Assembly: GCA_950097015.1 (NCBI GenBank)
Contig: CATNEN010000041.1
Location: 930,001-994,000, forward strand
Reading direction: 5' to 3'
DNA from: Macrostomum hystrix
Lineage: Eukaryota > Animalia > Platyhelminthes
Length of the DNA: 64,000 nucleotides
A program made the translations under genes and the position numbers. The notes beneath the pieces are model-generated. The model was not told the origin of the DNA. It saw only the letters and a list, made by a program, of their open reading frames with translations, and searched no databases. Shown one piece after another: positions 1 through 48,231 of this stretch (position 1 is the first letter of the stretch; each line of letters opens with the position of its first letter).

Positions 1-840
1 TCTTTTTGGACTTTCCTGAAAGTCCTTGCCAGTCGAGTTGACAGGCAAGAATGTCAAGAATGAACCAGCTGTCCGCTGTGACAGGGGCTGAATCATCGTC
101 TAAAGCCGCATAAAATGAGCATTTGTGCGAGAACTTCAGCCGTCATTTTCCTGGGTCTCTTGGTAAGATTGCTGACGGAGTGTCAGTGTGACAGTGACAG
201 CAGCTGACAGCTAACAAAGGCGCTGCTTTACCTGGAGGAGGTGGGCAGTCAGAGGATCTGGCTGAAACTGGGAGGGTACCAGCTGAAATTGTCGGCTGGA
301 AGTTTTTGCTACCAAATGAGCCAGGAAAAGGAATGCAATGAGAGACGGAGTGCACAAACACGGATGGGTCCGGTAACCTTGGAGAGGGCTGGAAGTCTGA
401 TCACTTTCCAACTGTCACCAACCAGCCGAAAATGAAGCTGCGGGCTTCGGTAAAAGACACGCAAACAACTTGGAGATGGAGTGGTGAAAGTTCGTTCTGG
501 CACATGTCCAAATTGTATTTTTGCTATTTAAAACTCTTTGGTAACAATGAAAACGAGCGGTCGCACTTCGTGAAAAGCCGAAAAAATGCGCAGGATTTTG
601 GTGCTGGATGGGTTGGGGTGGTAATACACATGGGGTATTTTCAGCTGGGCTTCTACTCGTAGTCTATAAGTAGCTCGTAGATGGCGAAGTTGCATGCAAA
701 TGTTACTGTGTAGCTTGTGCACAGAAGCAAAGGAAGCAGAGCTTAAGCGAGAGCCGAAGGCAATAAGGAGGTCAGTGGCGCTGTACGTGGCATTGCTAAG
801 TAATGTTGGGAGACAACAGGCAACGGGAAGTTGTGATTGG

Positions 841-4528: not shown

Positions 4529-4675
4529 TGTTCCCCATAGAGACCCTGCACTTGTGGCTGAGGAGGGATTGCGCATGACAGCAGCAGCAGCACCACCAAC
4601 ACCAGCAGGCAGGCTGTGTAGTGACAGCAGCTGAGATTCACTATACGCTGCAGGACTGGTCATGCGAAGCCTCAT
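4529..4675 (-). CDS. Possible upstream coding exon of the DEG/ENaC gene (MRLRMTSPAAYSES...SLWGT)
   Basis: ATG at 4675; phase-0 donor ACA|GTGAGG at 4528; compatible phase-0 acceptor CACACAG|AAA at 3040/3039 inside the open frame upstream of the channel ATG. The acceptor pyrimidine tract is weak; inference only. Confidence 0.35.
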
Positions 4676-4935
4676 TGGGTTGAAGAGTTCAGCGAACTGC
4701 AATTGCTATGGCTAAACCTGTTTGAATCATAAATTACTTCTGAAATTAAAAAATGCTTAGAGCTCACTGAGTTCACTTTCAGCCTACGGATCAAAGCGAA
4801 TCGCTTTTGTCAGATGTTGGGATTCTGATGCAGGACCTCAGCTGTCTCAATCATCAGCAAGTCGGGGAATAGTAATTTCGGTGACTTCTAGGCTTTAAGA
4901 ATAGAAAAATGTAGAAATGCAACTGGTCATTGTCA

Positions 4936-5304
4936 GGGGGTCGGTGGCAGAGCGGTTAACGCGTTTGCCACTCGCACCACAGTCCCTAAGTTCGATTCCA
5001 CGGCGAGGCCACATTTATTTGGGGCGCAGCCGCGGAGGGAAGGCTTGGGGGCTTGTCGTGCAATTTACGCCCTTGAGGGCCAACCTCCAAGGCACAGTTC
5101 GAGTGTACACTGCCTGACGATGAGAAAGTCAGGGCAGATGTACACACCTGTGTGAGCGTATGCCTGCGTACGGTATCTGTGTGCGTGTGTGCTCAGGAGT
5201 CAGCGAAATGGGCAGAATTGCCTCCTTGCTGGCTGCGGGTCTAGTGTCACCAAACTATGTGTCATTGCCCGCAGCTCTCCTGCAATTATTATTATATTAT
5301 TATT
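4936..5304 (+). mobile_element. tRNA-derived SINE, full-length copy 1, with 15-bp target-site duplication
   Basis: Pol III A box (GGTGGCAGAGCGGT) and B box (GTTCGATTCC), (ATT)n tail, flanking direct repeat AACTGGTCATTGTCA at 4921-4935 and 5305-5319; three more homologous copies in the window. Confidence 0.88.
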
Positions 5305-8300
5305 AACTGGTCATTGTCATTTTCATGATCCCACTCATATGATCCCACTCAGATCCCACTGCAGATCCCACTGCAGATCCCACTGGTGGCACTGTCAGGA
5401 AATGTCGCCAACACGCGCATAAGTCAGCGAGTCCAGCTTTAATTCGATATGCGCCGCAGATGCCTCCGAGTCCGGGGCCCATGGAGACTGGGGAGGAATT
5501 ATTAATTACAAAATTAGTCGGCCTGTGTATCCAGCTGGTTGGACAGAAAGTTTTAATTCAACACTCGACCCCGACACTCGCCAGCGCCGCCTCCGCTGCT
5601 GCCGCTTCCAGGCAGTCTCTAAATAAGAATAATATGCGCGCAGCCTCGGCGGCAATGTGAATTTCTCCCACCCACGAGTCGCTCCTCCCAATGTCCCCGG
5701 CTCCTCTCGCCCTCCGCTTCTTTATCTTTCCCACCGCTCCGCAGCAACAAAAAGCAACTCTCCATGCAGCAGGCCGAGCTGCATCGCCAGACGAGAGGGG
5801 CAGGCTAGTCCCCTGCGTCCGCCCAGCCCCAGGCCGCGACCTCCTCTTGCCGAGCTGGAGGTGCCGCATTGAGAACTGGCACATGTGCTTTGACAGACAG
5901 AATTTAAGCGACCCGGATAGCGAGAGAGAGCCCACAGCGAGAAAGTGCAGCGATTCGGCAAAGAAGCGACTAAGGGCGAGGGCGAGAAATTTCCACTCGG
6001 GGCGATTGAAGCACCTCCACCCTGCGCCGCGGCATGAGATCGCGATCGACTTGGCCGGGAACTCTGCAGCGGCCTAAACAAATCCTGACAGGCCTTCCCT
6101 CCCTCCTCAATGGTGACTGCGAGAATCATTCATCTGAGGAGGAAGTGCCGTTTTAAGTCTTGTAAAAATTTTTATTTCAGACACGCGGATCGGCGCTCCC
6201 GTCAAGAGCCCGACTCCCTGACGATTTTCCATCATAAAAGACACGCGAAACCGCTTTCTCACCCTCCTCTAAGCCGCATGAGCCAGCACCCACCTCTGTG
6301 CCCAGGTCTGCCTTCAGGTGCTCAAAACCCACCGACCCCTCCTGAGCTCTCTCAATTGTGTTTGCAAAAACTGACGCCTGTCGAGGACTGGGGCAGAGAG
6401 CGGCTGCCTTCGCTCAGTGCGGCTTCCCCTATCACGAAGGGCTGGATTTTTTTCTTCTTGGGATTAGAACGCATTGGCAAAGTGTTTTGTCCAGCGGTTG
6501 GAGGAATTGTCAGAGGAAGTCAATCTGGGGACTAGCTACAATGTTGTCTGGCGGACTGATTGCCAAGAACCTTTTGCCTTTACAGGTTGTCAGCCGCCAG
6601 TCTGAAGCAGCCAGCATTCAGATAGTGCTTGCAGCTTGCATTGTCTCCTATAGGGAATCCATCTTGTAGCCCGAATGCCACAGAGTTCGCGTAAATAACG
6701 GCGGTCAAGACAGACAGGCTCCGTTGTCCCTGGACAGTCCAGTTCAATGTCAACGAATCTGTGAGTGCGCCTTCTTTAGTTGGTGAAACGGTTTTGTCGA
6801 GTCTTGTCGCTATTGTGACCTGGTTGTATCCTTGCTGCAGTTGTACTGCTAGCTTGCAATGCAAAAAATGAAATTGCATCGGTTTCGCAGCCGTTCACAG
6901 CGAGTATCCACACCAGGAGGGCATCGATCATGATGCCGTGCACTCGTGCAGTAAACATGAATGGTTTTGGATGCACTGGGTGTCGATTTTTCTATGGCGA
7001 AATGAATTCGGAAAGATGGCAATTTGCTTTGAACAAATGATAATGTGTTTACTTTATTTTCTGTTACTGGGCATGGGTACAGTCGCGTATGCAGCAGCTG
7101 TTTGCATGATTCATCGCACCGCCCAAGTACTCCTACTAGAAGCTAGGTGTAGCTGAAAAGTGCAAAACTACACTTACAGACTACACAGTGCGGTTATAAC
7201 TTATAAGTATTGATTTTAGAAATACTGTTGCGAAATTTTAGAACTTTTTAGAACTACTACCACACATTTAATTATACTAAAGCCACAAAAATACTGAACG
7301 AAGTACGATACCGCGTACTAGCGACGCTCAATAAACATTGACACAAGATTCAAGCGAATTATCAAATTACTAACAGTAGAGACAGTGGGATATACATGAA
7401 ATGAACAGTCTATAAGTGAGTGAGCTAGTATGACTAGTCATTTAGCCATGACACTTCCAGATCTGTTAAAATTGTGCTTTTGCTATATTTTATTTATTAA
7501 TATTTATTAAAGTTGGACCATGTGCTTTCAGAAATAACAACTCAACAAACATTAAATTACGGACACACTTCAAAATTGTCTTTGTTCTAACGAAACGTAG
7601 TGAGTCGCGTGCGCTAGTCACATGAATGTGTTGAGTTCATTAGCAACAAGTGGAAGCTAAATAGCCGCAGCGACGTCAAGCACCCAGGTCCAACGAGATC
7701 TCTTTGGATAGTGACTAAACTAGAGCATGTTTGGTAGTTGTGAATAGCTAATTTGCTAACATTTAGCTTTTAGTATAGTTACTATCTGTGATGCAAGACT
7801 AATTTCGGTAGACTCAAGTCTCGAGATTTTGATATATAGGTAGGCCCTAAATACTTTTTAGCAGCCCACTGTTACTAATTCTTGAAATAGCCTTAGGGTA
7901 GGCCTAAACAAAAACAAATAAAACTTACCGCGCCTAATTTATTTTTTATTAATTCGCATATACCTTTTATTTCGGCTAAGCTCTAGTAGTGTAGCAAAAC
8001 AATTGGCCAAAGTTCTTATCTTAAAGTTGTAGGGCCTGTGATATTTTTTGTCCAACAAAGACAAATATGCATCAGTTCACATCTCGAAGTTATTTTTTAT
8101 AATTCTTTTTAGGCCAATTCAGTTACGTAGGAATTAAATTAGGCTAGATGCAGAAAAGGTAGATGTATAGGCATTGTAGCTAAGTCTAGACTTTAGTAGG
8201 CCCTATAGGTTGGAGCACATTTGGAGCACCACTTGGAGCACATTTTTTCAATGTTAGTCATCAATCCAACATATGTGTAGACTATAGGGGCCTAGTTAAG

Positions 8301-8424
8301 GTGTAAGAATTTAAGAAACATTTTTGCAATCCTCTAGTTTTGTTCATTTAGTTATTTATTACAAAAGATAAAGAATTTGGCAACATTTTAATGAGCAAAT
8401 AATTAAACTTTAAGTTTCTAATAA

Positions 8425-9250
8425 ATGGACAGTGTGTGGTTACGTATATGGCAAGATACTTGCTCATGTGGGAGGTTTCAACTTTCAAATGATTTGGCAG
8501 TGCTATGTCCTATGGCCCATTTGCAGCAGAGGCATGGTAGGCTAGTACGAAGCTCGTATGTGGCTAGGTTTATCGTGAAGATATACAAGAAAGAGTTAAA
8601 CAAGGGTGGGAACATCCTTTTCCTTTGGGAACAGGAAGTTAGAGGCAATGCCTTGAAGACTGTTCCAAAGATAATTGGTGGTGGGTGGCTGAAAGGGTAG
8701 AAGTTAGGGTGGCCTTGGTTTGACATCAGTGTCCAATGCTATATGGAAAGCAGGACTGAAGACTGCTCACAGACAGGGAGAACAGAGCACTCCTCATGCA
8801 GGTGAGACTGAGAGATGGGTGCACAGCTGTGACAGCCAGATAGGCTATGATATGCAAAGCCAAATTCTGAGCCACTTGGAGTATGTTCCAACTCAAATTG
8901 CTAAGGAGTGGGGTCCAGACTAGCAAGCAGTAGTTGAGCACCAAGCACCCAAGGGCTTTGTAGGTGACAGTTAAAGTTTCCTTATCCTACCCCCAGCTAT
9001 GGCAGAGCACAGAGGATATTATTAGTGCTGTGGACAGAGTTAGCAATTATTTTGGAGTGAACATGAAACTTGAGCAAGGTGCAATAAGCCAGGCTGGTCC
9101 CATTGAGATAGAGAGCAGGAGCAGTGGGGTATTCATGAGTAGTGCTAGTGAAAATTGTGACAGTTGACTTAGTTGGCAAAAGAAGCAAATTTTTGCTCTG
9201 AGGGTAGGTGCAAAGGCAATCTGGTAGGGCTGAAGCATAGCATAAAGCCA
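8425..9250 (+). pseudogene. Degenerate, CpG-poor coding-like segment in an AT-rich island, possibly a transposon relic
   Basis: Locally GC-richer than its flanks yet with very few CG dinucleotides; one frame reads protein-like but is interrupted by many TGA/TAG stops. No family recognised with confidence. Confidence 0.25.
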
Positions 9251-10433
9251 GCTGACAAGAGGGCCACTGGTTAAGGATTGTAAAATCATTGGTGTCAAGA
9301 ATCTAAGTCAAGAAATTCAGAGACAAGACAAGATAACAAAAGAAAAAAAGACAAAAATAAAATTCATTAACATCATAAAATGCATTAACATTTTTCGTTG
9401 CATTTTTATTTCTCTTTAAAGTTTAAATGGTATGGCTTATGACATAATAGTTAAATTTTCATATCAATAATAAATATATAGCATTAAATCTTGTCTAAAG
9501 TTTCTTGAAAAAGCTTTAAAAATGCCAAGATCTTATTTTGAATCTTGTCTTAACAAGATTTTGTTACAGATTTTGTTACACCTCTAGTCTGTTGCTTTTG
9601 ATGTTCAGGTTGTATAGGACAATTGTTTGTGATTATTGTGAATGTTGGTCATCGTAAGCAATGTATGTCATTGCTGCAATATGACCAACCATACTGTGTC
9701 TTCAATAGCTGAAAAGTAAAAATGGTGTCAAAATAAATATAGCAGGAAACTGAAACATTTCCATTCATCTTCAAATTCTTTGTCCTTGTGCAGCAATATT
9801 TATTGGCATGGAAACTGAATAGTGAATATGTTTTAAAGCTCTTCTGTTTATTTTAGTTTATGTTTATTTTTGGCATTAAAAATTTTTATGTAGCTCAAAT
9901 TAAATTAATATGAAAGGGCTCAGTGTCATATTAAATTTAGTATTAGGTTTAATCTTTATAGCTAAATTAGCTAACAAATTAATTTTTAGGTTAAATAATA
10001 TAATAATTTTGAAGTAAATCCACCTATACTAAATCTTTAATCAGGTAAAATCAGGTTTAATCAGGGAAACGTTTTATTGGCATATCTGCCTTATACTGTG
10101 TAAAAAATTCATTAAGCTAAAAACATTTTTGCACACATTTTGTTTGTAAGGCCTAATTGATATATAATTTAGTTAATTTTTTGCAAAAACTAAAACGTTA
10201 GATTTTTGTTAGTCAGTTTCATAAAATAAAGCTAGTTAGGGTTAAAAACATCACATTCAACAAGGTTTCCAAGTCTGTTGTAAATACTAGCACTGGGTAG
10301 CTTTGTACATGATACAATCTGTCTACAGACACATTTTACTTCTTTATTTCCTGTCAGCTTTGATGCTGAATTTAAATAGAGGCAATGAATTGCTCAATGT
10401 TGCATGTCATCTGCATGAACTGCACCCTTTCAG

Positions 10434-18307: not shown

Positions 18308-21113
18308 CAATTTAACTCCCAAGTCGCACAGCACGGCATTGCCTCACTTTCTGTCTATGGCACGGCGATGACGGACTGCAGCGGCAGGACTCACCTGTGG
18401 GTCTTCTGGCCCAGCGCCAACGCCACTGACTGCGCTCAGTCCGCAGACGTCAAGCTCTGCTTAGAGGACATGAAGCATGAGCAAGGCATCGCCAATGCCA
18501 CTGTTTTTGGCCCGGTGAGATCCGATTTCCTGGTGTGACTTTCCAGTTTGCCAGCGTGACTTTCTTTCTTTCTAGTGCGACTTTCCTGCTGGCTAGTGTG
18601 ACTTACCTGTTGACTATAGTGTGACTTTCCTGTTGACTATAGTGTGACTTTCCTGCTGGCAAGGGTGACTTTCCTGTAGATAGGGTGACTTTCCTGTGGA
18701 TAGGGTGACTTTCCTGTGGATAGGGTGACTTTCTTGCTCAGTCGAGGGGCAGTACATATGTTCGCGTTTGACATGCCTTCACAGGAGAAGCTGCAGACGT
18801 CACCGGGCCAGTTCTATCGACTCATGCAGCTGCCCTTAACTGGCCGCATCCTGCACTGCTCGAAGGCCTTCAATGTGCTGGTGAGCTGTCGGCTCAAGCT
18901 GCATCCGAGTCAGATTCCCATTTCCTTCAGCCACGCACCCGCACCCGCACACTCCGCCCTTTCAGCTCGAGCTCGCGCCATCGAACCAATCGGGCTGGAG
19001 GCAGGACACGAAATGCAGTGGCGATTTCAGCAGGTCCGCCTGCTTCATTCGCTGTGAGAGCCGGTGCACAATCTGCCTATTGGGCTCACTCTGTACTTGT
19101 GAAATTTGACTGCGGGAAAATATTGGAAGGATTGAAGGTCAGAGCAAAGGAGAGAGAAGGAGTGAATAAAACTGAAGAGTGAAGAGAGAGAAGGGAGAGG
19201 AGAGAGCGGAGGTAGAGGAGAGAGCGGAGGGAGAGGAGAGAGCGGAGGGAGAGGAGAGAGCGGAGGGATAGGAGAGAGCGGAGGGATAGGAGAGAGCGGA
19301 GGGAGAGGAGAGAGCGGAGGGAGAGGAGAGAGCGGAGGAAGAGGAGAGAGCGGAGGGAGAGGAGAGAGCGGAGGGAGAGGAGAGAGCGGAGGGAGAGGAG
19401 AGAGCGGAGGGAGAGGAGAGAGCGGAGGGAGAGGAGAGAGCGGAGGGAGAGGAGAGAGCGGAGGGAGAGGAGAGAGCGGAGGGAGAGGAGAGAGCGGAGG
19501 TAGAGGAGAGAGCGGAGGGAGAGGAGGAGCGGAGGGAGAAGAGAGAGCGGAGGGAGAGGAGAGAGCGGAGGGAGAGGAGAGAGCGGAGGGAGAGGAGAGA
19601 GCGGAGGGAGAGGAGAGAGCGGAGGGAGAGGAGAGAGCGGAGGGAGAGGAGAGAGCGGAGGGAGAGGAGAGAGCGGAGGGAGAGGAGAGAGCGGAGGGAG
19701 AGGAGAGAGCGGAGGGAGAGGAGAGAGCGGAGGGAGAGGAGAGAGCGGAGGGAGAGGAGAGAGCGGAGGGAGAGGAGAGAGCGGAGGGAGAGGAGAGAGC
19801 GGAGGGAGAGGAGAGAGCGGAGGGAGAGGAGAGAGCGGAGGGAGAGGAGAGAGCGGAGGGAGAGGAGAGCGGAGGGAGAGGAGAGAGCGGAGGGAGAGGA
19901 GAGAGCGGAGGGAGAAGAGAGAGCGGAGGGAGAGGAGAGAGCGGAGGGAGATGAGAGAGCGGAAGGAGAGGAGAGAGCGGAGGGAGAGGAGAGAGCGGAG
20001 GTAGAGGAGAGAGCGGAGGGAGAGGAGAGAGCGGAGGGAGAGGAGAGAGCGGAGGTAGAGGAGAGAGCGGAGGGAGAGGAGAGAGCGGAGGGAGAGGAGA
20101 GAGCGGAGGTAGAGGAGAGAGCGGAGGGAGAGGAGAGAGCGGAGGGAGAGGAGAGAGCGGAGGGAGAGGAGAGAGCGGAGGGAGAGGAGAGAGCGGAGGT
20201 AGAGGAGAGAGCGGAGGGAGAGGAGAGAGCGGAGGGAGAGGAGAGAGCGGAGGGAGAGGAGAGAGCGGAGGGAGAGGAGAGAGCGGAGGGAGAGGAGAGA
20301 GCGGAGGGAGAGGAGAGAGCGGAGGTAGAGGAGAGAGCGGAGGGAGAGGAGAGAGCGGAGGGAGAGGAGAGAGCGGAGGGAGAGGAGAGAGCGGAGGGAG
20401 AGGAGAGAGCGGAGGGAGAGGAGAGAGCGGAGGGAGAGGAGAGAGCGGAGGGAGAGGAGAGAGCGGAGGGAGAGGAGAGAGCGGAGGTAGAGGAGAGAGC
20501 GGAGGGAGAGGAGAGAGCGGAGGGAGAGGAGAGAGCGGAGGGAGAGGAGAGAGCGGAGGGAGAGGAGAGAGCGGAGGGAGAGGAGAGAGCGGAGGTAGAG
20601 GAGAGAGCGGAGGGAGAGGAGAGAGCGGAGGGAGAGGAGAGAGCGGAGGGAGAGGAGAGAGCGGAGGGAGAGGAGAGAGCGGAGGGAGAGGAGAGAGCGG
20701 AGGGAGAGGAGAGAGTTGAGTATTGTCGCCGGAGCGAAGAGTAACCCGTGGCATTCCACATCCGTGTCCCGGTGCCAGTGGCCGCTGACCGGCCCACCTG
20801 CAGCGATGGCGGTGACTTAGAGGGCAACTGCAGCATGAACAAGGAACTGCCGGCTGACATTCTCCAGCTCCTGCTGCAGCGGCGGCGGCAGCAACAGCTC
20901 GCCTGCGCCTCGCCGAGCCCCCCGAGCACCACCTTGGTCGGGCCGGTTGTCGGGACGACGGCCGCGCTGCTGGTGATCGCCGGCTTCGGCTTACTGGCCT
21001 GGGCGCTGCTGTCCAACCGGCTGGACCCGCCCATCGAGACGCGGCACTGGGAGCCGAAGGACCTGGTGTTCGTGGACCCGGACAACATCGAGTGCCGCCT
21101 GCTGGAGAACTGA
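18308..21113 (+). CDS. 3' part of a single-pass membrane protein with a short cytoplasmic tail; exons 18308-18514, 18785-18880, 18966-19033, 20804-21113; 5' exons unresolved (candidates near 17571-17880)
   Basis: Four exons chain with consistent phases (0, 0, 2) and GT-AG sites. Cys- and NxT-containing ectodomain, TM VVGTTAALLVIAGFGLLAWALL, about 35-aa tail ending ...ECRLLEN*. Confidence 0.65.
18535..18735. repeat. Degenerate 19-22-bp repeat (GTGACTTTCCTGT...)
   Basis: About 9 diverged units in an intron. Confidence 0.8.
19190..20715. repeat. 18-bp GA-rich minisatellite, about 1.5 kb (GAGAGCGGAGGGAGAGGA)
   Basis: Highly homogeneous intronic array; source of the three 550-650 aa low-complexity ORFs on the minus strand. 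Confidence 0.97.
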
Positions 21114-22525: not shown

Positions 22526-23810
22526 CTGTTAGTCAGTGAATGGCTGGTCAGACCGCACCTGTTAGTCAGGGAATGGCTGGTCAGACAGCACCTGTTAGTC
22601 CGTGAATGGCTGGTCAGACAGCACCTGTTAGTCAGGGAATGGCTGGTCAGACAGCACCTGTTAGTCAGGGAATGGCTGGTCAGACAGCACCTGTTAGACA
22701 GGAATGGCTGGTCAGACAGCACCTGTTAGTCAGGGAATGGCTGTTCAGACAGCACCTGTTAGACAGGAATGGCTGGTCAGACAGCACTTGTTAGTCAGTG
22801 AATGGCTGGTCAGACCGCACCTGTTAGTCAGGGAATGGCTGGTCAGACAGCACCTGTTAGTCAGTGAATGGCTGGTCAGACAGCACCTGTTAGTCAGGGA
22901 ATGGCTGGTCAGACAGCACCTGTTAGTCAGGGAATGGCTGTTCAGACAGCACCTGTTAGACAGGAATGGCTGGTCAGACAGCACTTGTTAGTCAGTGAAT
23001 GGCTGGTCAGACCGCACCTGTTAGTCAGGGAATGGCTGGTCAGACAGCACCTGTTAGTCAGTGAATGGCTGGTCAGACAGCACCTGTTAGTCAGGGAATG
23101 GCTGGTCAGACAGCACCTGTTAGTCAGGGAATGGATGGTCAGACAGCACCTGTTAGTCAGGGAATGGATGGTCAGACAGCACCTGTTAGTCAGGGAATGG
23201 CTGGTCAGACAGCACCTGTTAGACAGGAATGGCTGGTCAGACAGCACCTGTTAGACAGGAATGGCTGGTCAGACAGCACCTGTTAGTCAGGGAATGGCTG
23301 TTCAGACAGCACCTGTTAGACAGGAATGGCTGGTCAGACAGCACTTGTTAGTCAGGGAATGGCTGGTCAGACAGCACCTGTTAGTCAGGAATGGCTGGTC
23401 AGACAGCACCTGTTAGTCAGGGAATGGCTGGTCAGACAGCACCTGTTAGTCAGGGAATGGCTGGTCAGACAGCACCTGTTAGTCAGGAATGGCTGGTCAG
23501 ACAGCACCTGTTAGTCAGGGAATGGATGGTCAGACAGCACCTGTTAGACAGTGAATGGCTGGTCAGACAGCACCTGTTAGACAGGAATGGCTGGTCAGAC
23601 AGCACCTGTTAGACAGGAATGGCTGGTCAGACAGCACCTGTTAGACAGGAATGGCTGGTCAGACAGCACCTGTTAGACAGGAATGGCTGGTCAGACAGCA
23701 CCTGTTAGACAGGAATGGCTGGTCAGACAGCACCTGTTAGACAGGAATGGCTGGTCAGACAGCACCTGTTAGACAGGAATGGCTGGTCAGACAGCACCTG
23801 TTAGACAGCT
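22526..23810. repeat. 32/33-bp minisatellite, about 39 copies (GGAATGGCTGGTCAGACAGCACCTGTTAGTCAG)
   Basis: Head-to-tail units with 32- and 33-bp variants. Confidence 0.95.
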
Positions 23811-32000: not shown

Positions 32001-35000
32001 GCGAAACTGGCGTTGGCGTGGCTGTCGCCGGCTCGTCGTGGGCTCCGCTGTGGCGGCGGATGGCCGAGTAGAGCGGGTCGATCTCGCTGGTCAGGTCGCT
32101 GTCTATGGTGTAAACCGACGCGGCGGCTGGCAGTCGCGGCGAGGTGCCACCGGCTCCGGCGGCAGCGGCGCGGGTAGTCGCCGCGGCCAGCGTCGGTAGA
32201 TCCGGGGTCGTCTCGGACGCGGCAGCGGAAGAGGCCTGGCGGCCGGAGCCGAAGCCGAGTCGATGGGCGATGCCCGGCAGCGGGAAGTCCTGCAGGTGCC
32301 GCTTGAGGAGGCTGCGGCCGGCTGCCGCTGCGGAGAGATGAGGCGCAGGCTGGGGAGGCTGGGGCGGCAGCGGCAGCGGTGGCTGCTGCTTCGGGGGAAC
32401 TGGTGGCAGCTCGCGGTCCGGGTGGCTGCGGCTAGACAGAACGGACTGCTGAGACTCGAGCCTGGAAGTGGGGGCGATGGACGCTGAAGCTAAGGGGGCC
32501 CGTCTGTGAAGACAAAATAAAGATAATCGATGGCTGTGTATTTGAGACGCGGATGGTCATGGAGAAACAGTGCTCATTTAGTGCTGTCCATAAGTGCAGT
32601 AGTCGCTAATTGGCATCGGCCTTGGGAGCCATGATGAGCGGCTCATTCATTCAAAACTCGCATGCAGAGCGAAGTTCGATTTGCGTGTAGGCGAAAGGAG
32701 GCGCAGGATTTGTGAGAGGGCGGATTAGTGAGAGGGCGGATTTGTGAGAGGGCGGATTTGTGAGAGGGCGGATTAGTGAGAGGGCGGATTTGTGAGAGGA
32801 CGGATTTGTGAGAGGGCGGATTTGTGAGAGGGCGGATTTGTGAGAGGGCGGATTTGTGAGAGGGCGGATTTGTGAGAGGGCGGATTTGTGAGAGGGCGGA
32901 TTCGTGAGAGGGCGGATTTGAGTGAAATACGGTCGCGCCAATAACGCACCTGGGTCTGGGCAGCTGGGACGCGGAGTCGCTGGGGGCTGTCGACTTCCCG
33001 GTGTCCGCAGTCGCTGCGCCAGGAGCGTCGGGGCGCCGCAGGCGGGCCACGAAGCTGTCGCGAAGACTGCCGAGTCGACGCCCGACCACCGAGCGACGGT
33101 CCCGCCTGGCCGCCGTTGACGCGGGCGCCGCAGCTGCCGGGGCCGAATCGCCGAGACTGGCCGGCGGCGCTGCAGACTCGTAGATGTCGGAGCCGGCCGC
33201 GTCACGGCTGCGAGCGTGGGGGAGGCGAGGACGGAGGGGTTGGTTCAGTTGACTACGGGAAACCTTACAGTTTTTCTTACCTATCAGGATGTGAACGCGA
33301 TTAGATATTTAGGGGGATATTGGCGCCGAATTAGGGATCCAGAATCAAGGACTGACTCATCTGGGATCTGGAGATAAAGGATTGATAATGAGGGGTTAAG
33401 GATTAGCGGGTTGATTGCCGATTAGAGCAGACGGGGATTTGAGACTGGTTGCTGATCGGTTTGCAGGATTTGGAATTGTTTGCGAAGTCTGGGATTTGAG
33501 ACTGGGTGCTGATCGGTTTGCAGGATTTGGAATTGTTTGCGAAGTCTGGGATTTGAGACTGGGTGCTGATCGGATTGCAGGATTTGGAATTGTTTGCGAA
33601 GTCTGGGATTTGAGACTGGGTGCTGATCGGTTTGCAGGATTTGGAATTGTTTGCGAAGTCTGGGATTTGAGACTGGGTGCTGATCGGTTTGCAGGATTTG
33701 GAATTGTTTGCGAAGTCTGGGATTTGAGACTGGGTGCTGATCGGTTTGCAGGATTTGGAATTGTTTGCGAAGTCTGGGATTTGAGACTGGGTGCTGATCG
33801 GTTGGCAGGAATTGGAATTGTTTGCGAAGTCTGGGATTTGAGACTGGGTGCTGATCGGTTTGCAGGATTTGGAATTGTTTGCGAAGTCTGGGATTTGAGA
33901 CTGGGTGCTGATCGGTTTGCAGGATTTGGAATTGTTTGCGAAGTCTGGGATTTGAGACTGGGTGCTGATCGGTTGGCAGGAATTGGAATTGTTTGCGAAG
34001 TCTGGGATTTGAGACTGGGTGCTGATCGGTTTGCAGGATTTGGAATTGTTTGCGAAGTCTGGGATTTGAGACTGGGTGCTGATCGGTTTGCAGGATTTGG
34101 AATTGTTTGCGAAGTCTGGGATTTGAGACTGGGTGCTGATCGGTTGGCAGGAATTGGAATTGTTTGCGAAGTCTGGGATTTGAGACTGGGTGCTGATCGG
34201 TTGGCAGGAATTGGAATTGTTTGCGAAGTCTGGGATTTGAGACTGGGTGCTGATCGGTTTGCAGGATTTGGAATTGTTTGCGAAGTCTGGGATTTGAGAC
34301 TGGGTGCTGATCGGTTTGCAGGATTTGGAATTGTTTGCGAAGTCTGTTAAAAGCACATCGCAATTTGCCTTCGCAAGTTGCAAGTATTTTGTGACCTCCG
34401 CGAGATTCAAACAAAATGAAAGGTCGGCCGAGCCCCAATCAGCTAGCCAACCGAATTCATCTCCAAGAAAGTGTCTGGCTTCGCATTCACCCCAGACAGT
34501 CGCAGCATGATGCCTCGCAGGCGGTTCAGGCCGGACACAAATAGCAGCTTCTGACCCGCTGCGCAGGTGGCTTCCCTCAGTCGGGCAGGTTCAATAGCGG
34601 GAGTGAAAAAGCAAGAATAGCCCAGGTGCAACATTCCAGGCCACGGGATCCGGTCTTATCTCGGCTGCCAAATCTGACAGAACAGGCGAGGCGCACCAGG
34701 GCTTCATTCCCATGGGGCACACAGCACATTGCGATCCTCCGTGCAAGCCCGCTTGCTGCGGACTGGGCAGCACAGCTGGGTCTTTTATAGCATTCAAGTT
34801 CATCGGAGTCCAGTCCGAGTTGTGCTCACTGGATCCATTCCAAGGATCAAGGTGTGCTCAGTCCATTCCAAGGATCAAGGTGTGCTCAGTCCATTCCAAG
34901 GATCAAGGTGTGCTCAACTCATTCCAAGGATCAAGGTGTGCTCAGTCCATTCCAAGGATCAAGGTGTGCTCAACTCATTCCAAGGATCAAGGTGTGCTCA

Positions 35001-40862: not shown

Positions 40863-42050
40863 CACATCGCTAAGTTTCAGGTGGTCTCAATAAACTCATC
40901 GCAAAATGCTAAGCACTTTGCTAAGCAGTTAAAATAGATTGTCTGATGCACGCAAAACACGCAATCAGTGCTTTCACTACAGCCTCAGATCCTCCAATGG
41001 GCATAAGTATATCACGGATTCGGACACTTTTATTCTGAGCGACCACCGAGACTGAAAACAAAGTTGTACAGATTTGAGAGAATTTTTTTTGCGTTTTTTG
41101 TTTTAAAATATAAATTAAACCACGTCAATCCGTACGAGTAGTATCGAAAGCGTTTAGACTCTAAATATTCTCAAGGGCAGATTAATTCAGTTTTTTACGC
41201 AAGCCATTCTTAGTTGTGCTTGCTTTTTGGCATTCTGTACTGATTTGGTGAAGCATGGGCGCCACAAACACTCGGGCTGTTTGGAATATGCATTCGTAGC
41301 CTTTGGAAGTGTCGAGACTGGGAAGCTCTGGTCTCTGGCACTTCCCTCGGAGCCACAGCGAAACCAAAACTGCAAACCGCACAGCGGCTCATTGGAGCGC
41401 GCTAACCAGTTGTCCAGGTGTTTGGTTGCAATTCCTCTACCCAAACAAGCGCGTTACCTGCTCCGCTACAAGTTGCAAGGTCACTGACTGCCAGTCCAAA
41501 ACTATGCGATACCTTAATGCTACCTTGAACAGGTGAGTTTTGTGTTGTGCCATTGCACACTGAAGCCTGGGCAATAATAAATGCAAATGCTTCTGCCTTG
41601 GCTGTTCATTGTGCTGCAGTTCATTATGAAGCAATTTAGTCTGTTAAAAAATATGCAGCACTTGCGGTTAAAGTCTGTGAAAGCTTTCACCTGGTGCAGG
41701 ATTTCAACTTTATTCACACCGTCCTGAATGAGCTTTGCATAATAAATTTCAAATTAATTCTTGCTATGAGAGCGCAGATTTCACTGAAAATACGGCTCGT
41801 AAAATTTATTTGGAGATTCAGAGTCTGTTAGTAGCGAGTAATTTAAAGCCAGCGCTACGTGCGAAAATCTAACCAATGCTTACTGCTAGCTGAAACTGCG
41901 CCTGCAGTGCAGGTGTAACTGATTCATAGAAATGAGTTGCGGATGCTCTCAATAATTTGCTGGTTGACAGCAGGATCAGAAGACATGCGCTACAGAGCAC
42001 ATGACTTCAGGACTGAAATAAGTCAGGGAAATGTTCAGGATGAGGCGTAG

Positions 42051-42387
42051 AATGATAATAATAATTGCATGAGGGCTGCGGGCAATGGCACATCATTTGG
42101 TGACACTAGACCCGCAGCCAGCGAAGAGGCACTTCTGTCCATTTCGCTGACTCCTGAGCACAGACGCACACAGATACTCTACGCAGGTATACGTTCTGAC
42201 TTTCTCATCGTCAGGCAGTGTACACTCTCACTGTGCCTTGGAGGTTGGCCTTCAGGGGCGTAAATTGCACGACAAGTCCCCAAGACTTCTCTCCGCGGCT
42301 GCGACCCAAATAAATGTGGCCTCGCCGCTCAGGGACCTTGGTGCGAGAGGCAAACGTTCGACCGCTTTCCCACTGATCCCGAGCCCC
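42051..42387 (-). mobile_element. SINE copy 3
   Basis: Reverse complement matches copy 1 from the tRNA-like head (GCGGTCGAACGTTTGCCTCTCGCACC) to the ATT tail, with small internal deletions. Confidence 0.85.
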
Positions 42388-42987
42388 AGATGGGCAAATC
42401 AATGTTGTTGTGGGTTCGGGCTATGGGTAGTATTTTGCAGCAGTCGGAACTGTGTTATCAGCGCAATATTTTTTGCTCAGTAGGTTTACAGAGACAGCTT
42501 ATCAGGAGGCCGACCTCGCCATGAGCCGAGCACCCGCCTCGTGCCTGCTGGAATTCAGCCGAATTGTGTCTCTGCCATGAGTGTGCAGTCTTTACTCTGC
42601 CAAGCCCAAAAATGTTTGTGAGGAGTCGAAAAATTAGGAAGAATTATTCGCTCTTGGCGCAAAATGCGCACCTGCCGTCCTACCTGCCGAGGCTCAATCA
42701 GTTGGGGCGGAGGTCGACTGCCCGCGAGGTCTGACTCACAAGCCATAGGCTGCGGCCTTATCAGCTCCACTGTTCGTTCACGACACTAGGGGAGAGGGCG
42801 CCACCCCTTACCTACAACTTGGCTGTCCTGCACCCTCCCTCTATTTATGCTCGTTTGGTGATTAAAGTGCCGAAAATGAACTCCTGCCCCGCCCACTGAC
42901 CGGGACTGCGAAGCTAAAACGCGAGCAGCAGAAACACCAACAAACCGTGCCGGGACACGCTCGAGTTCACAAGCTGCAGCCAGTATC

Positions 42988-45900
42988 ATGTTTCGGCTCT
43001 GGCTAGTGGCCACTCCGTTGCTGCTGGCAGTGCTACTCGGACGCGGCGGTTGCAACACAACCAGCGTTGAAGTTCTGCTACCCGATGGTCAGTGCCACGA
43101 TCGCTTTTGCTTCTGTTCCGTTAGAAAATTCCAAGCGATTTGCATGATGGCATGCGTCACGAGGACAAACTTGCGGACGTGACAGCCGGTATATACTCCT
43201 GGAAATAAGGTTTCAGTTATTCAGCAGATAAGCCATTGAAAAACTTTCAGATACGAACTTCAACAAGTATAACTTCGTCTACTTGTCAATCAACAGTGTT
43301 GAACTGATTGACAGCGTAAGTAGCAGCTTGGCGCCCGAGAAGTTCGATGTCGACAAGAGCTCCGCACCCAACCAGATCGTATTCAAGGCCGATGTTCCTG
43401 ACGGGACGTACTTAATTCAAGTGGCATCGGGATCCGACAACCACCAGCTGACTTTGACGGTCTCTCGCCTTCCGGTCAGCGTTGTTGACCAGGCTGTATT
43501 TATTTGGGGTGAGTGAGCTTTCGCTCATAAATGAGAAAAAATACGAGCTTAGTTAGCACTTGTATGACTTTTGTGCAAAAAATTACGTCCCTTAGAATGG
43601 CGATTTGCGTAATGGACCACACCTGACTGCCTTTACATATCCTTCACAGGACCGACTACCGATGTGAACTCTTTTCTCAATCGGTTGAGTAGCAGCACCC
43701 GCCTCTCCCTGTTGAGCGGGTTAAATGAAAACTTCACGGAGGCAGCAGTGCTAATTCCGACTCCAAATATTCGGGTCCGCACTTTCATGCCCCTGTGGGA
43801 AGCGTACGACCTGATCAAGAATGAGACTGAGGGCACCGCGATCGAGGTCATGCCAGACCGTTGCACCAACGTCTCCGGTCAGCTGTGCCGCAGCCGGCTG
43901 TCATTTCCAATAGGCTTTATGTCTGTGCGCAGGGCTGCCGTGCAGCTGGGCAGTGACAACAACTTTCTCGGCTTCGAACTGAGCTTGGTGGCCCAGACTG
44001 CCGAGCAAATGAGCGCCGAGCCCTGTCTGCCGACCACCTGCCTGAATGGCGGTTCCTGTGATCCCAGCTTTGTTGGTGTCGGATTCAGGTGAGTTTTTAC
44101 ACCCCGTCGCCCCGTTAGAGTTTTTTTCAAATGAATAATGTCATGAATGAAGGCTAAGGATTCATCTAATTATCAGCGATGTCTGTCGTACACACAGATT
44201 CACATTCAAGCAGCGCATAGGAACTTTGATTTAACGAAAGTGGCAACACTAAGAGCTTCTTCTTCTGGTTGTTTCGACATTACTGTATGACTATGCAAAG
44301 CAGTCGTTGCGATAAAGTAGATGGTGAGACATTGCAGATGTTTGGTTATTTCTGCAAATATTTTTCGTTTTACACAGGTGCATCTGTCCAACGAGACCAG
44401 ACATCCAGTGGGGTCCCAGGTGCGAGCACCCAATGAAAAGCTACAGTACTGCGAGCACTGGTGGCGATCTGGCCTACACTCGTCACTGGATTGGCGGGCT
44501 GCCCCATTCATCAGAGTCTTTGAGCATCTCATTTGAGATGCTCGGAACGACTCGATCAGATCGAAATGAAATCATAGTTTTGAAGAGCTCAACGAATCTT
44601 ACTGTCCAATTGCTCCGTTTTGCACTAATACCAAGTAGGAATGTACTGAAAGTATCCGGCAGCCTCATTAGCGCAAATGATTTAGACATTGCTGCTGATC
44701 AAATTAACTTAGGGAGCTGGTTTTCTGTTTTCTTTACGCTAACTTCGACAAAGGTAAGACGACGAAAGGCGATTGTTTTGACAAAAAAATCCGTCCGAGC
44801 GTGTTTTTACATGTGAGTGTCTCGCCCGATTGCTTTTAGAGTTCCGTAGTTGTTTGTCCTAAGAGTCTTCCTATCGTTGGTGGATCATCGGACCCGCTTA
44901 AATGCTTTGATAAGGAAGGCGGTGCTGGCGGCCGCATCACAGACTTTTCGAATTATTGGCTGGAAGTCGGTAAGGGTTTCCTGGGATGCATCCAGACCGT
45001 CTCCGTGAACGGATATCGCGTTGACATGGCGGCTTCGAGAACAGTTGCTATGTACCCAGCAGATGTAAACAACCATTGCTCACAACAATCATGTACCGTT
45101 CGGCAGCCAAATGCTCAGCCCGTGTGCGGAATCCACTCAGCTTGTTATGGAGTATACAAGTCTGGGAATGCTCCAGTAGAGTGTTACTGCAGGTGCCTCG
45201 GTCCAAAAAGAAAGTCGATCGAGAAGGTCACACTAAGTGGACAATGTGACGCAGCAAACGTGGAATCAAACCTGTGCATACAAAGTGAGATTTCATTACT
45301 TGAATTATTCGTTTACTGTTCTCTGGTCTTCTCTGACTAAAATTAAACATAAATTTCAGCCCCACTGGTAATCAGTACAACATCCGACGGTGTGAGCACA
45401 TGGCATGTGAATTCGACTGACCACCTGACTGTGCCAGATGTGAACTCAGCGACCATTGAGATGGAGCTTCGGACTCGTGTTGCCAATGCAAGCGGTGTTC
45501 TGAATGCTAGATTAACAGACAATTCCAGAGCCACAAAATTTACTGAAAGCCTTGATGTAAGTTTTATATTGCTCAGGTTCGCATGAGAAACTTTGAAGAA
45601 GAATACTTTCTCAAATGAAATCGATTGAATTTCAGGTATCGCGTGGTTTTCTGCAGCTGTGCATCAGCGGCATAATAACGCAGTGCTTCCCGTTTCCACC
45701 CATCCGAGTTGACGACGGCGAGTGGCACTCGGTGTCTGCCGCAACTCACCTGCAATTGCTGGTTCTGACGATTAACAGCGTGACCCTACTGCATGACCTG
45801 GGATTCAGTGTGGCTGGCATTACGAAGCTGGAATTAAATGCAACGATTGCTAATAGTAGGCAATCGCATAAGCACCTTCATTTCGAAATAATTCAATAAA

Positions 45901-47171
45901 GACACAAAGACGAAAACTAATTTAATGGCACCCTGGCTTTTTCAGGCCTGTTGCGGAACATACGTGTCTCTGGAACGTACATGTCGACCACCACCAACGG
46001 CACGGATCAATCAAGAGACTCGCCAAACGGGCTGGTGATTGTTCCACGCCTGGCAAGCGGTGCAACGGTTGGCACTGAAGGTGAAGATCCAGCGCCACCT
46101 TGTAACTGTACTTCGAACGAAAACTGCACGAAACAATGGGGCAAGACAACCTGTGAGTGTCTGTCCGGACAAGAGAGGGATGCTAGCAACAGCTGTGTTG
46201 CGGTGAACCCGTGTGTAAAATTTAAAATTTCCTGTCCAAGTGGCGGCTCGTGTCGACCGATTGCTGGCGACCCGGGATTCGAGTGCCTCTGTGCTCCGGG
46301 TGTCTCCAGCCGCATGTGCCGAGTCGGCGGTGATAGCACGTCAGCACCGGCCACGGCGGCTGTTCAGTGGTGGATCTGGCTGATCAGTGCCATTGCGGTC
46401 CTACTTTTACTGCTTGTCTTGGTTTTTATCATTTTCTTTCTTCGACGTCCATTCAACAAATCTAAGGCTGCGGCTTCTAGCGGAGGGGTCGATCATGAGA
46501 TTGAGAAGATACATGAAGGCATGGGCGAGAGCAGCGACTACGACGGGGTGCGTAAGTACTCACTTCAACTTCGTTTTCTCCTTTCCTATAAAAGTAATTG
46601 AAAACCCATCCAAAAACGCTTCTAATGCTGGCACCGCAGCACCAGAGGACTACAAAGGACCCCTCAGTCTGCACTTCACACCTCAGAAAGACAGCAACGG
46701 TGGGCTGCCAAACTTTCAACCGGTTCACACGGCGACGCCTGGTGAGTGATTGTGTGGCGTGATTGGGTGTGCTGCTGTGAGCTGGTGTGAACAGGTGTTA
46801 ACTGTTTATTTTGTAGAAGAAATTGGGCACGTCGGCAGTGTCGCACTGCCAGTCGCATTCTTGACCAGGGACTTAATCCCCATCGCAAATGTAAGTACCT
46901 CCAAACACTGACAGTACCGGCGCCCGAGTCTCAGCGCCCCATCGGGACACTCAACCCGCCTGTCAAGACAGACGGCGTGCCGGACCCGTCAGTTCTGCCA
47001 ATGGGCGACGAAACGCTGAACTACGGCTACGAGGACACGCGCGACGACGACGCTTCTGACCTGGACCGAGTCAGCCTGGTGTCAGCGGACACTGACTTGT
47101 CCATGGACCTTAAGTCGACACTGGACGCCTGGGGGCCGAAGTTCAACTCCCTGTCCGATATCTTGACCTGA
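42988..47171 (+). CDS. Classical (type III/non-chordate-like) cadherin-related protein, about 999 aa: signal peptide, one degenerate cadherin-like repeat plus NC region, EGF-LamG-EGF-LamG-EGF, TM, catenin-binding tail. Exons 42988-43087, 43251-43508, 43650-44088, 44378-44753, 44840-45284, 45360-45556, 45636-45855, 45946-46551, 46640-46741, 46915-47171
   Basis: Ten exons chain in phase to exactly 3000 nt. EGF (PCLPTTCLNGGSC...RCICP...WGPRCE; PCVKFKISCPSGGSCRP...FECLCAPG), LamG (GFLGCIQTVSVNG; VDDGEWHSV), TM WWIWLISAIAVLLLLLVLVFIIFFL, EGMGE juxtamembrane motif, and C-terminal LNYGYED...LDAWGPKFNSLSDI typical of the cadherin cytoplasmic domain. Confidence 0.88.
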
Positions 47172-48231
47172 TGAGCATAACTGTTTACTGCGGGTATCTT
47201 CTATGAGCCTAAGATCTTTTACAAGTACGGACAATTTCAGATAACAATTAAACAGCGCACTTGTAGCATTACTGGTGTGTTAATCGGAGGTTTTTCGGTC
47301 TTAATCCTATCAGTTTGAAAGCTTCAGTAGTCAAACTTAAAAAACACATTCCAGACTTAAAACGCTTTTTAGAAAGTTTTCGTAAGTTATCGAGCATAAT
47401 TCGGCATAAGTCTTGGCTTCATAATCAAGTGCAAGATAAATTAATTATTTTTTAATCGCGCAATTATACTGGTTAGAATGAAAAGCGGCACGGGTCTTGT
47501 AAAATATAATTGATTAATTTCAGCACTTCTGAGTTCTGAAGAATAGTTTAGTTTTGTTTAAATCTACACTCTGCCGCTTGTATTGCCAGTTCCCCGCTTC
47601 CAAGGCTTTGGCATGTGGCTAACTGTCAGGCAAAGCCATTGCGCCCAGATGGCTGCGTCAGCCTCATTGTTCGCCTTTTCTACAAAAACGCTTTAAATTG
47701 TTACGCCTAGCCTGCGCCTGTGTTTTCTCACAAATCAAAGCAATCAGTTTTACAACGCATCTGTACTTTTCATTCTCTTGATTCATCATGATTCTCGCGG
47801 TATATTTACGTGTTTTAGTAGTAAAAATATACTTTAGTTAATTTACTGTAACATTACAACGCATGTGAGTTCAGTTTGTCCATATTCGTCTAGGCAAGCG
47901 AGACTGAGTTAAGCTGTAGCTTATTTGAATTTAAATCCGACCAAATAGCGTCAGAAACTTTATGCCGAACCCGAGTAGTAGCAGCGTAATCAAACTATTT
48001 GAGTCACTTTTCAAACGAGCCCTGAGCAAATTTTCTTGCTTGAATGATCTACGCTTTTCCGGCATTCATTCTGTATGTTCAGTGGCTGGAGGGCAAATCG
48101 TTTGATAATCAATAATAGTATACCTTCCAGCATGCATGGCCGTGGAACGCCGATGCCATTGCAAACATTTTCAATTGATTCGTCAAAAGCTTCTTCATAA
48201 AATCGTTTAGATAACGGATCTTGATAATTAA

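What the first reader, a model, noticed from the sequence alone, without database searches (positions are those of the whole stretch)
42988..47171. 'Headless' classical cadherin: catenin-binding tail and EGF/LamG stalk but almost no cadherin repeats
Seen: a signal peptide (MFRLWLVATPLLLAVLLGRGG) splices in phase directly to a single degenerate cadherin-like beta domain (FDVDKSS...PDGTYLIQV...LTLTVSRLP), then NC region, EGF-LamG-EGF-LamG-EGF, TM and a cytoplasmic domain with p120-type EGMGE and beta-catenin-type YGYED...WGPKFNSL motifs; the model totals 999 aa. No DRE/DxND/LDYE calcium motifs are visible. Known: non-chordate classical cadherins normally carry many EC repeats before this stalk; EC-less forms were reported from amphioxus. 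Inference: an independent loss in this lineage, giving a Ca-independent LamG-mediated adhesion molecule or a dominant-negative catenin regulator.
Basis: partly seen in the sequence, partly recalled or inferred. Interest (0 to 1): 0.8.

Follow-up and report, generated by a model that had tools for sequence, protein, structure and literature searches.

The report
Flatworm classical cadherin without cadherin repeats
This flatworm makes a cell-adhesion protein that keeps the stalk and the catenin-binding tail of a classical cadherin but has no recognisable cadherin repeats; a build so far described only in amphioxus, here shared with another Macrostomum species and with flukes.

Summary
Spliced transcript contigs from three runs of one study define a 10-exon gene (42988-47171, + strand). 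It encodes exactly 999 aa: signal peptide, a 225-aa N-terminal region, EGF-LamG-EGF-LamG-EGF stalk, one membrane span and a cadherin-type cytoplasmic tail (Pfam PF01049, just above its cut-off). The contigs start at 42888-42908 and the first ATG is 42988.

No cadherin repeat was found by any test. Pfam, my own repeat profile and tblastn with repeat-bearing cadherins all failed, in the protein and in all 64 kb of the window. The tblastn control worked.

The genome is a Macrostomum-type flatworm, not amphioxus. M. lignano has the same build at 49-54% identity, in several copies, two of them in tandem. Fluke homologues of 735-788 aa, including about ten Schistosoma species, start directly at the first EGF. 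The loss is therefore old within flatworms, not particular to this lineage. By phylogenetic position it is independent of amphioxus Bb1/Bb2-cadherin.

Whether the N-terminal beta domain is a decayed cadherin repeat stays open: the models are poor and show only a generic Ig/cadherin-like sandwich. Function is inferred: calcium-independent, catenin-linked adhesion.

Nine literature searches found no report of this in flatworms. I rate it a new member of a known kind, interest about 0.6.

The parts
42888..42987 (+). 5' untranslated part of exon 1, as far as the transcript contigs reach
   Evidence: Contigs start at 42888, 42890 and 42908 with record position 1. No ATG before 42988; in-frame genomic TGA at 42877-42879.
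42988..43050 (+). Signal peptide (aa 1-21), in exon 1 (42988-43087)
   Evidence: Hydrophobic N-terminus after the first ATG. Exon 1 joins 43251 through a GT..AG joint in three runs.
43051..43657 (+). N-terminal beta-rich domain (aa 22-122; end of exon 1, exon 2, start of exon 3). Fold unresolved: an Ig/cadherin-like sandwich is predicted at low confidence.
   Evidence: Seven predicted strands, pLDDT 50-66. Weak Foldseek hits to Ig, cadherin and dystroglycan domains. No Pfam, profile or hhalign similarity to cadherin repeats. 64% identical to M. lignano P0042, more than LamG1, EGF2 or LamG2.
43658..44023 (+). Second N-terminal region (aa 123-244), in the position of the NC region of non-chordate cadherins; predicted alpha/beta, fold unknown
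   Evidence: No hit to Pfam Ig_Shg (PF24811) or any other family. hhalign against type III cadherins is negative. pLDDT under 40.
44024..44426 (+). EGF-like domain 1 (aa 245-282), split by the intron 44089-44377
   Evidence: Aligns to the Pfam EGF stretch 332-363 of type III fragment P0048. tblastn hits of crustacean cadherins at 43991-44077.
44427..45076 (+). Laminin G domain 1 (aa 283-470)
   Evidence: Collinear hhalign with LamG 395-576 of P0048 (98.3%) and with the fluke LamG1, which passes Pfam.
45077..45280 (+). Cysteine-rich EGF-like domain 2 (aa 471-538)
   Evidence: Cysteine pattern; collinear alignments.
45281..46094 (+). Laminin G domain 2 (aa 539-728)
   Evidence: Weak Pfam Laminin_G hits on exon 7 (E 0.036). 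The same stretch passes the cut-off in M. lignano orthologues (27-30 bits). Aligns to LamG 697-828 of P0048.
46095..46322 (+). Two EGF-like domains before the membrane (aa 729-804)
   Evidence: tblastn and phmmer hits to the EGF regions of N-cadherins. 70% identical to M. lignano.
46374..46439 (+). Transmembrane helix (aa 822-843)
   Evidence: Strongest hydrophobic window of the protein.
46440..46740 (+). Juxtamembrane part of the tail (aa 844-914) with the HEGMGESSDYD motif; spans the intron 46552-46639
   Evidence: Joints 46551|46640 and 46741|46915 in three runs. The motif resembles the p120-binding EEGGGEED-DYD core of classical cadherins (my own knowledge). 61% identical to M. lignano.
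46741..47171 (+). Catenin-binding part of the tail (aa 915-999: LNYGYED ... WGPKFNSLSDILT) and stop codon
   Evidence: Pfam PF01049 E 1.9e-5, 25.1 bits against cut-off 24, profile positions 4-58 of 60. The WGPKFN-SDI motif is shared with the tail ORF of a type III cadherin contig. 69% identical to M. lignano.
47172..47400 (+). 3' untranslated region; continues about 410 nt beyond 47400 in contig record 8
   Evidence: Record 8 is 3719 nt long and reaches position 3309 at 47400.

Best explanation
This is an intact, transcribed flatworm gene for a descendant of the non-chordate (type III) classical cadherin. It has lost all recognisable cadherin repeats. It keeps the membrane-proximal EGF-LamG-EGF-LamG-EGF stalk, the membrane span and the p120/beta-catenin-binding tail. 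It also carries a conserved 225-aa N-terminal module of unresolved fold.

Shown: the gene structure, the open frame, the transcript 5' end, the absence of repeats by sequence, and the collinear homology of stalk and tail to type III cadherins. The same build is shown in M. lignano and, without the N-terminal module, in flukes.

Inferred: by analogy with amphioxus Bb1/Bb2-cadherin, it sits in adherens-type junctions. There it would bind like molecules on the neighbouring cell through its LamG/EGF or N-terminal module without needing calcium, and couple to actin through beta-catenin and alpha-catenin.
For: Transcripts and frame.
- Nine GT..AG joints and a 5' end at 42888-42908 in three runs.
- A 999-aa open frame.
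- First ATG at 42988, and an upstream genomic stop.

Absence of repeats.
- Negative with Pfam, with my own profile on the six-frame window, and with tblastn.
- The tblastn positive control scored 1e-12.

Homology.
- The stalk is collinear with type III cadherin fragment P0048 (hhalign 98.3%, E 1.4e-14).
- The tail passes the PF01049 cut-off.
- The nearest Atlas clusters to the M. lignano orthologue are neural-cadherin and DE-cadherin.

Conservation.
- Full-length alignment at 49-54% identity to three M. lignano proteins that start with their own signal peptide at the same position.
- Two tandem M. lignano copies are hemmed in by other genes.
- The N-terminal beta domain, the last EGFs and the tail are the best conserved parts.

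Flukes.
- Collinear from LamG1 to the YGYE motif (hhalign 99.4%).
- They run signal peptide straight into EGF1.
- 784 aa in about ten Schistosoma species.

Precedent. Amphioxus repeat-less cadherins mediate Ca-independent homophilic adhesion at junctions (PMC3216324).
Against: - Function is wholly inferred: no binding, localisation or adhesion data exist.
- The tail is divergent. It is barely above the Pfam cut-off and has no phmmer hit to solved cadherin tails. M. lignano tails fall below the cut-off and fluke tails have no Pfam hit at all.
- The transcript evidence is assembled contigs from one study. Contigs drop rare isoforms and cannot show a true start.
- One M. lignano paralogue (P0001) appears to lack the catenin-binding tail, so not every family member can work through catenins.
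- I could not test whether flatworms also keep a repeat-bearing classical cadherin.
Confidence: 0.6

Rival explanations
1. The short form is only one isoform. As in C. elegans hmr-1, a distant upstream promoter would give a long, perhaps neuron-specific, transcript whose repeat-encoding exons splice into 43251.
For: hmr-1 does exactly this (PMC3216324). Contigs drop rare variants.
Against: There are no repeat-like exons in the 43 kb upstream or anywhere else in the window. The only joint into 43251 comes from 43087 in all three runs. In M. lignano the tailed paralogue starts about 3 kb after an opposite-strand EF-hand gene and about 7 kb after another paralogue, with no repeat signal in 25 kb. 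The 60-kb S. haematobium locus is also negative.
Confidence: 0.07
2. The protein is real but is not a homophilic adhesion molecule. It would be a LamG-based receptor for matrix or another ligand, as in neurexin or dystroglycan-binding LamG proteins. Alternatively it would be a membrane sink that regulates free catenins.
For: LamG domains commonly bind heterologous ligands (my own knowledge). The Atlas look-alikes of the fluke protein include neurexin and crumbs clusters. A tail-less paralogue exists in M. lignano. The weak fold matches of the N-terminal module include dystroglycan domains.
Against: The one studied precedent with this build, Bb1/Bb2-cadherin, is a homophilic junctional adhesion molecule. 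Tail conservation of 69% between the two Macrostomum species argues for a kept catenin link.
Confidence: 0.25
3. The locus is an unexpressed or decaying partial duplicate of a full-length cadherin.
For: None found.
Against: The mRNA contigs are fully spliced, with an intact 999-aa frame. The gene has its own signal peptide. Conservation over the full length with M. lignano.
Confidence: 0.01

Closest known systems
Amphioxus Bb1- and Bb2-cadherin (Oda et al. 2002, 2004, as summarised in PMC3216324)
   Same: Classical-cadherin cytoplasmic domain, an ectodomain made of LamG and EGF modules shared with type III cadherins, and no cadherin repeats.
   Different: A different phylum (a spiralian flatworm against a cephalochordate), so very probably an independent loss. 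The Macrostomum protein has an extra conserved 225-aa N-terminal module of unknown fold. Adhesion, calcium independence and junctional localisation are shown for Bb-cadherins only. I could not fetch Bb sequences, so no alignment or tree was made.
Type III classical cadherins (DN-cadherin, echinoderm G-cadherin, crustacean neural-cadherins P0009, P0016, P0035; fragment P0048)
   Same: A collinear EGF-LamG-EGF-LamG-EGF stalk, a membrane span and a catenin-binding tail.
   Different: They carry many calcium-binding repeats and, in P0048 and DE-cadherin, a Pfam Ig_Shg domain before the stalk. Neither is detectable here.
C. elegans HMR-1A
   Same: A shortened epithelial classical cadherin with its own small first exon.
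   Different: HMR-1A still has two repeats and shares its gene with the 14-repeat HMR-1B. No long form is seen here.
Fluke proteins annotated 'Neural-cadherin', 'neural-cadherin 2' or 'Hmr-1p' (Fasciola THD28670.1; Schistosoma XP_051072248.1, TNN09060.1 and others)
   Same: Homologous and collinear from LamG1 to the YGYE tail motif; no cadherin domain.
   Different: They are 735-788 aa and begin at EGF1 straight after the signal peptide, so they lack the N-terminal module. Their tail lacks the terminal WGPKF motif and has no Pfam PF01049 hit.

Membership tests
Cadherin superfamily / classical cadherin in the strict sense | Tandem extracellular cadherin repeats (PF00028) with calcium-binding motifs | tested here: not met
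   No PF00028 hit. No profile, tblastn or hhalign hit. No D.ND., LDRE-type or DRE motif.
Cadherin superfamily / classical cadherin in the strict sense | Conserved cytoplasmic domain with p120 and beta-catenin binding regions (PF01049) | tested here: met
   PF01049 at 25.1 bits against cut-off 24, E 1.9e-5. EGMGE...DYD and YGYED...WGPKF motifs are in the expected order. Binding itself is not testable here.
Cadherin superfamily / classical cadherin in the strict sense | Single-pass type I membrane protein with a signal peptide | tested here: met
   N-terminal hydrophobic leader and one strong hydrophobic span at aa 822-843.
Non-chordate (type III) classical cadherin | Membrane-proximal EGF-LamG-EGF-LamG-EGF complex | tested here: met
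   Collinear hhalign to P0048 (98.3%). Pfam LamG hits in the orthologues. Mapping.
Non-chordate (type III) classical cadherin | NC / Ig_Shg region between the last repeat and EGF1 | tested here: inconclusive
   A 122-aa region lies in that position. It has no PF24811 hit, no profile similarity, and a model of pLDDT under 40.
Repeat-less classical cadherin-related molecules (Bb-cadherin kind) | Classical tail plus LamG/EGF ectodomain and no cadherin repeat | tested here: met
   See the rows above.
Repeat-less classical cadherin-related molecules (Bb-cadherin kind) | Calcium-independent homophilic adhesion and localisation at adherens junctions | not testable with these tools
   Needs cell aggregation assays and localisation experiments.
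Repeat-less classical cadherin-related molecules (Bb-cadherin kind) | Common descent with Bb1/Bb2-cadherin (orthology) | not tested
Independence is inferred from the positions of the two phyla and from repeat-bearing type III cadherins in the lineages between them.

The most novel reading that the evidence does not exclude
Rhabditophoran flatworms as a group, from Macrostomum to flukes, have replaced the repeat-bearing classical cadherin by this repeat-less LamG/EGF molecule as their only catenin-binding junctional receptor. Their adherens junctions would then work without cadherin repeats or calcium. This would be a second, independent origin of the amphioxus solution, and the conserved N-terminal module would be the new adhesive face.
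Probability: 0.3. Interest if true: 0.8.

Novelty: new member of a known kind. Interest (0 to 1): 0.6.

Why it matters
Repeat-less classical cadherins have been treated as an oddity of amphioxus. A second, independent and apparently ancient case would show that the EGF/LamG stalk can repeatedly take over adhesion from the cadherin repeats. The case spans free-living and parasitic flatworms and is supported by transcripts.

It would also give a tractable system for asking how such molecules bind, since RNAi and transgenesis exist for M. lignano. It would change how flatworm epithelial junctions and the adhesion-only beta-catenin paralogues of flatworms are read. Public annotations call these proteins 'Neural-cadherin' or 'Hmr-1p' although they have no cadherin domain.

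Tried and rejected
Amphioxus origin. The many minisatellites made me suspect an amphioxus genome and a plain rediscovery of Bb-cadherin. Earlier notes and the best hits to M. lignano rejected that.

Alternative exons. I considered a 74-nt in-frame exon at 46817-46890 and an acceptor at 46595. The contigs use 46640 and skip 46742-46914.

Structure.
- Two AlphaFold jobs on the N-terminal module gave pLDDT 47 and 40.
- Foldseek gave only weak matches (E about 4e-4 at best, TM 0.2-0.3) to alpha-dystroglycan N-terminal and proteolytic domains, CELSR1, protocadherin repeats and titin Ig. I treat these as a lead, not a result.
- The first job also cut the second domain short.

Profile comparisons. 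hhalign of the N-terminal region against crustacean cadherins, P0048 and a repeat alignment was negative. The only local match aligned the mature N-terminus (SVEVLLPD) to the last strand and linker of a repeat, at E 0.28.

My own repeat profile proved weak on the control (E 0.048), so I rely on Pfam and on tblastn with its control.

Searches that added little.
- The alignment-based protein search returned only M. lignano proteins and one type III fragment.
- The Atlas search on the N-terminal part gave nothing.
- phmmer of the tail against solved structures gave nothing.
- Rfam and tRNA scans of 36-50 kb gave nothing.
- One literature search was wasted on the term 'BBC'.
- The run SRR7638773 that holds P0048 could not be assigned to an organism.

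Full report
**What is at the locus**

Reading 42700-47400 and translating the frames gave a chain of open segments with good splice sites. Laying assembled contigs of public runs on 41500-47400 settled the model. Runs X4, X5 and X6 come from one study and are not on record as RNA. Each holds one contig of 3.3-3.7 kb that lies on the + strand sequence with nine joints. All joints are GT..AG, so the contigs derive from spliced RNA.

The exons are 42988-43087, 43251-43508, 43650-44088, 44378-44753, 44840-45284, 45360-45556, 45636-45855, 45946-46551, 46640-46741 and 46915-47171. Introns are 75-289 nt. Three short contigs of a fourth run from another study lie inside exons 4, 5 and 8.

**The 5' end**

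This is the point on which the claim stands or falls.
- The three long contigs begin at 42888, 42890 and 42908 with no extra letters in front.
- The only joint into 43251 comes from 43087.
- The first ATG in the covered stretch is 42988.
- It opens a typical signal peptide.
- The genomic frame is closed by TGA at 42877-42879, and no AG lies between that stop and the contig starts.

For this transcript, 42988 is therefore the start codon. Contigs cannot prove a transcription start and they drop rare isoforms, so a rare long form is not excluded.

**No cadherin repeats**

- Pfam finds no Cadherin domain in any exon.
- A repeat profile built from 35 repeats of crustacean neural-cadherins finds nothing better than E 11 in any six-frame ORF of 20 aa or more in the whole 64 kb, and nothing in the spliced protein. 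That profile turned out to be weak on a control.
- tblastn with eight long cadherins hits only the stalk.
- tblastn with their repeat-only parts gives no hit better than E 0.26 in the window. The same queries find the last, degenerate repeats of an unrelated type III cadherin contig (L001) at 1e-11 to 1e-12.
- The ectodomain has none of the calcium-binding motifs.

**What the protein is**

- The C-terminal exon matches Pfam PF01049, the cadherin cytoplasmic region, at E 1.9e-5. The score is 25.1 bits, just above the curated cut-off of 24, over nearly the whole profile.
- The juxtamembrane part carries HEGMGESSDYD. From my own knowledge this resembles the p120-binding EEGGGEED-DYD core.
- The last residues, WGPKFNSLSDIL, match the WGPKFNKISDIY of the tail ORF of L001.
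- From aa 250 to the membrane span the protein aligns collinearly with the EGF, LamG, EGF, LamG, EGF stalk of type III fragment P0048 (hhalign 98.3%, E 1.4e-14; mapping).
- For the M. lignano orthologue the nearest Atlas clusters are neural-cadherin and DE-cadherin.
- The tail is divergent: phmmer finds no solved cadherin tail.

**Which organism, and who else has it**

I first suspected amphioxus because of the many minisatellites. That would have made this a rediscovery. Earlier notes of the scan call the genome a Macrostomum flatworm. My exhaustive HMMER search with exon 8 found one strong hit, M. lignano PAA54150.1.

The spliced protein aligns over its full length to three M. lignano proteins at 49-54% identity. 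This is therefore another species of that kind, or a distant paralogue. Each M. lignano protein has its own methionine and signal peptide at the same position. The longer annotated N-termini of P0042 and P0043 continue upstream of that methionine and look like translated leader.

On the M. lignano contig L004 two paralogues lie in tandem. The second starts about 3 kb after an opposite-strand EF-hand gene. There is no repeat signal in those 25 kb.

**Flukes**

A weaker hit from the same search led to fluke proteins of 735-788 aa. They come from Calicophoron, Fasciola, Trichobilharzia, Heterobilharzia and about ten Schistosoma species, and are named 'Neural-cadherin', 'neural-cadherin 2' or 'Hmr-1p' by their sources.
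- They have LamG and EGF domains and no Cadherin domain.
- They are collinear with the Macrostomum proteins from LamG1 through the membrane span to the YGYE motif (hhalign 99.4%, E 5e-22).
- In the complete models (Fasciola, S. haematobium) a signal peptide runs straight into the first EGF.
- The 60-kb S. haematobium locus shows no repeat signal.

These are gene predictions and I did not see their transcripts.

**The N-terminal 225 aa**

This module is absent from flukes. It has no family hit and no profile similarity to repeats, to the NC/Ig_Shg region or to anything else in type III cadherins.

Two AlphaFold runs on M. lignano orthologues used only five alignment rows and were poor (pLDDT 47 and 40). 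Both place about seven strands in the first 100 residues at pLDDT 50-66, followed by a helix-and-strand region.

Foldseek gives only weak matches: alpha-dystroglycan N-terminal and proteolytic domains, CELSR1, protocadherin repeats and titin Ig. An Ig/cadherin-like sandwich followed by an alpha/beta domain is therefore a lead and no more.

The beta domain is 64% identical between the two Macrostomum species. That is more than LamG1 (44%), EGF2 (43%) or LamG2 (53%), and close to the tail at 69%. It is therefore under constraint and is a candidate for the binding face.

**How it most likely works**

The architecture, the transcript and the conservation are shown. The rest is inferred. The one studied precedent is amphioxus Bb1/Bb2-cadherin, which has a classical tail, a LamG/EGF ectodomain and no repeats. 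It mediates calcium-independent homophilic adhesion and sits with beta-catenin at embryonic adherens junctions (PMC3216324). I propose the same mechanism here.

Flatworms have adhesion-only beta-catenin paralogues (PMC5643146). That would fit a kept catenin link.

Rivals are a non-homophilic LamG receptor or catenin sink (0.25), a hidden long isoform of the hmr-1 kind (0.07), and a dead duplicate (0.01, contradicted by the transcripts).

**Novelty**

Nine full-text searches found no description of a flatworm classical cadherin, repeat-less or otherwise. I also read passages of six papers.

A planarian transcriptome paper collected flatworm sequences by their PF00028 domain. In its tree, the only cluster it reports as shared by human, helminth and planarian sequences is the calsyntenins, and it names no flatworm members in the classical cluster (PMC6109357). 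This is compatible with, but does not show, the absence of repeat-bearing classical cadherins in the phylum.

The library lacks most subscription journals, so a prior report cannot be excluded. I file this as a new member of a known kind: repeat-less classical cadherin-related molecules, in a second phylum.

**What remains open**

- Whether flatworms also keep a repeat-bearing classical cadherin.
- Whether planarians and tapeworms have this gene.
- The fold and origin of the N-terminal module.
- All of the function.

Noticed in passing
window 42050-42330: A stretch of about 280 bp just upstream of the gene is held by hundreds of contigs at 90-99% likeness. Summed depths are 3,000-10,000, against 19-30 for the gene, and the contigs show many loose ends and rearranged joints. 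It looks like a dispersed, highly transcribed repeat. There is no Rfam or tRNA hit.
   Followed up: partly
window 841-3054, minus strand: An intronless 737-aa ORF matches the amiloride-sensitive sodium channel family (PF00858, E 3.6e-56).
   Followed up: partly
window 11393-35328: An exceptionally dense run of minisatellite arrays, for example an 18-mer repeated 85 times at 19183-20715, a 33-mer 39 times at 22526-23808 and a 57-mer 16 times at 33434-34346. Most of the long ORFs there come from these arrays, and the ORFs I scanned had no Pfam hit.
   Followed up: partly
L004 10001-15370 (M. lignano contig NIVC01002960.1): The upstream tandem paralogue (P0001, 865 aa) ends 24 residues after the membrane span. 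No tail exon is found before the next gene. This copy therefore seems to lack both the cadherin repeats and the catenin-binding tail.
   Followed up: partly
L001 (Logan contig of SRR7638773), 251-3496 and 3865-4314: A type III cadherin transcript fragment from an unidentified organism. It has last repeats, Ig_Shg, EGF and two LamG domains. Its catenin-binding tail sits in a separate ORF, so there is a frame break or an unspliced piece in the contig. Its tail motif WGPKFNKISDIY is close to the flatworm one.
   Followed up: partly
window 46595-46639 and 46817-46890: Two in-frame alternatives with usable splice sites are not used in the contigs: an upstream acceptor for exon 9 and a 74-nt candidate exon. 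They could be minor isoforms of the cytoplasmic tail, or nothing.
   Followed up: no
P0031 (UniRef A0A1I8H4E9, M. lignano, 2795 aa): One M. lignano gene model fuses the repeat-less cadherin (residues 1176-2016) to a RING-domain protein. This is probably an annotation merger.
   Followed up: no
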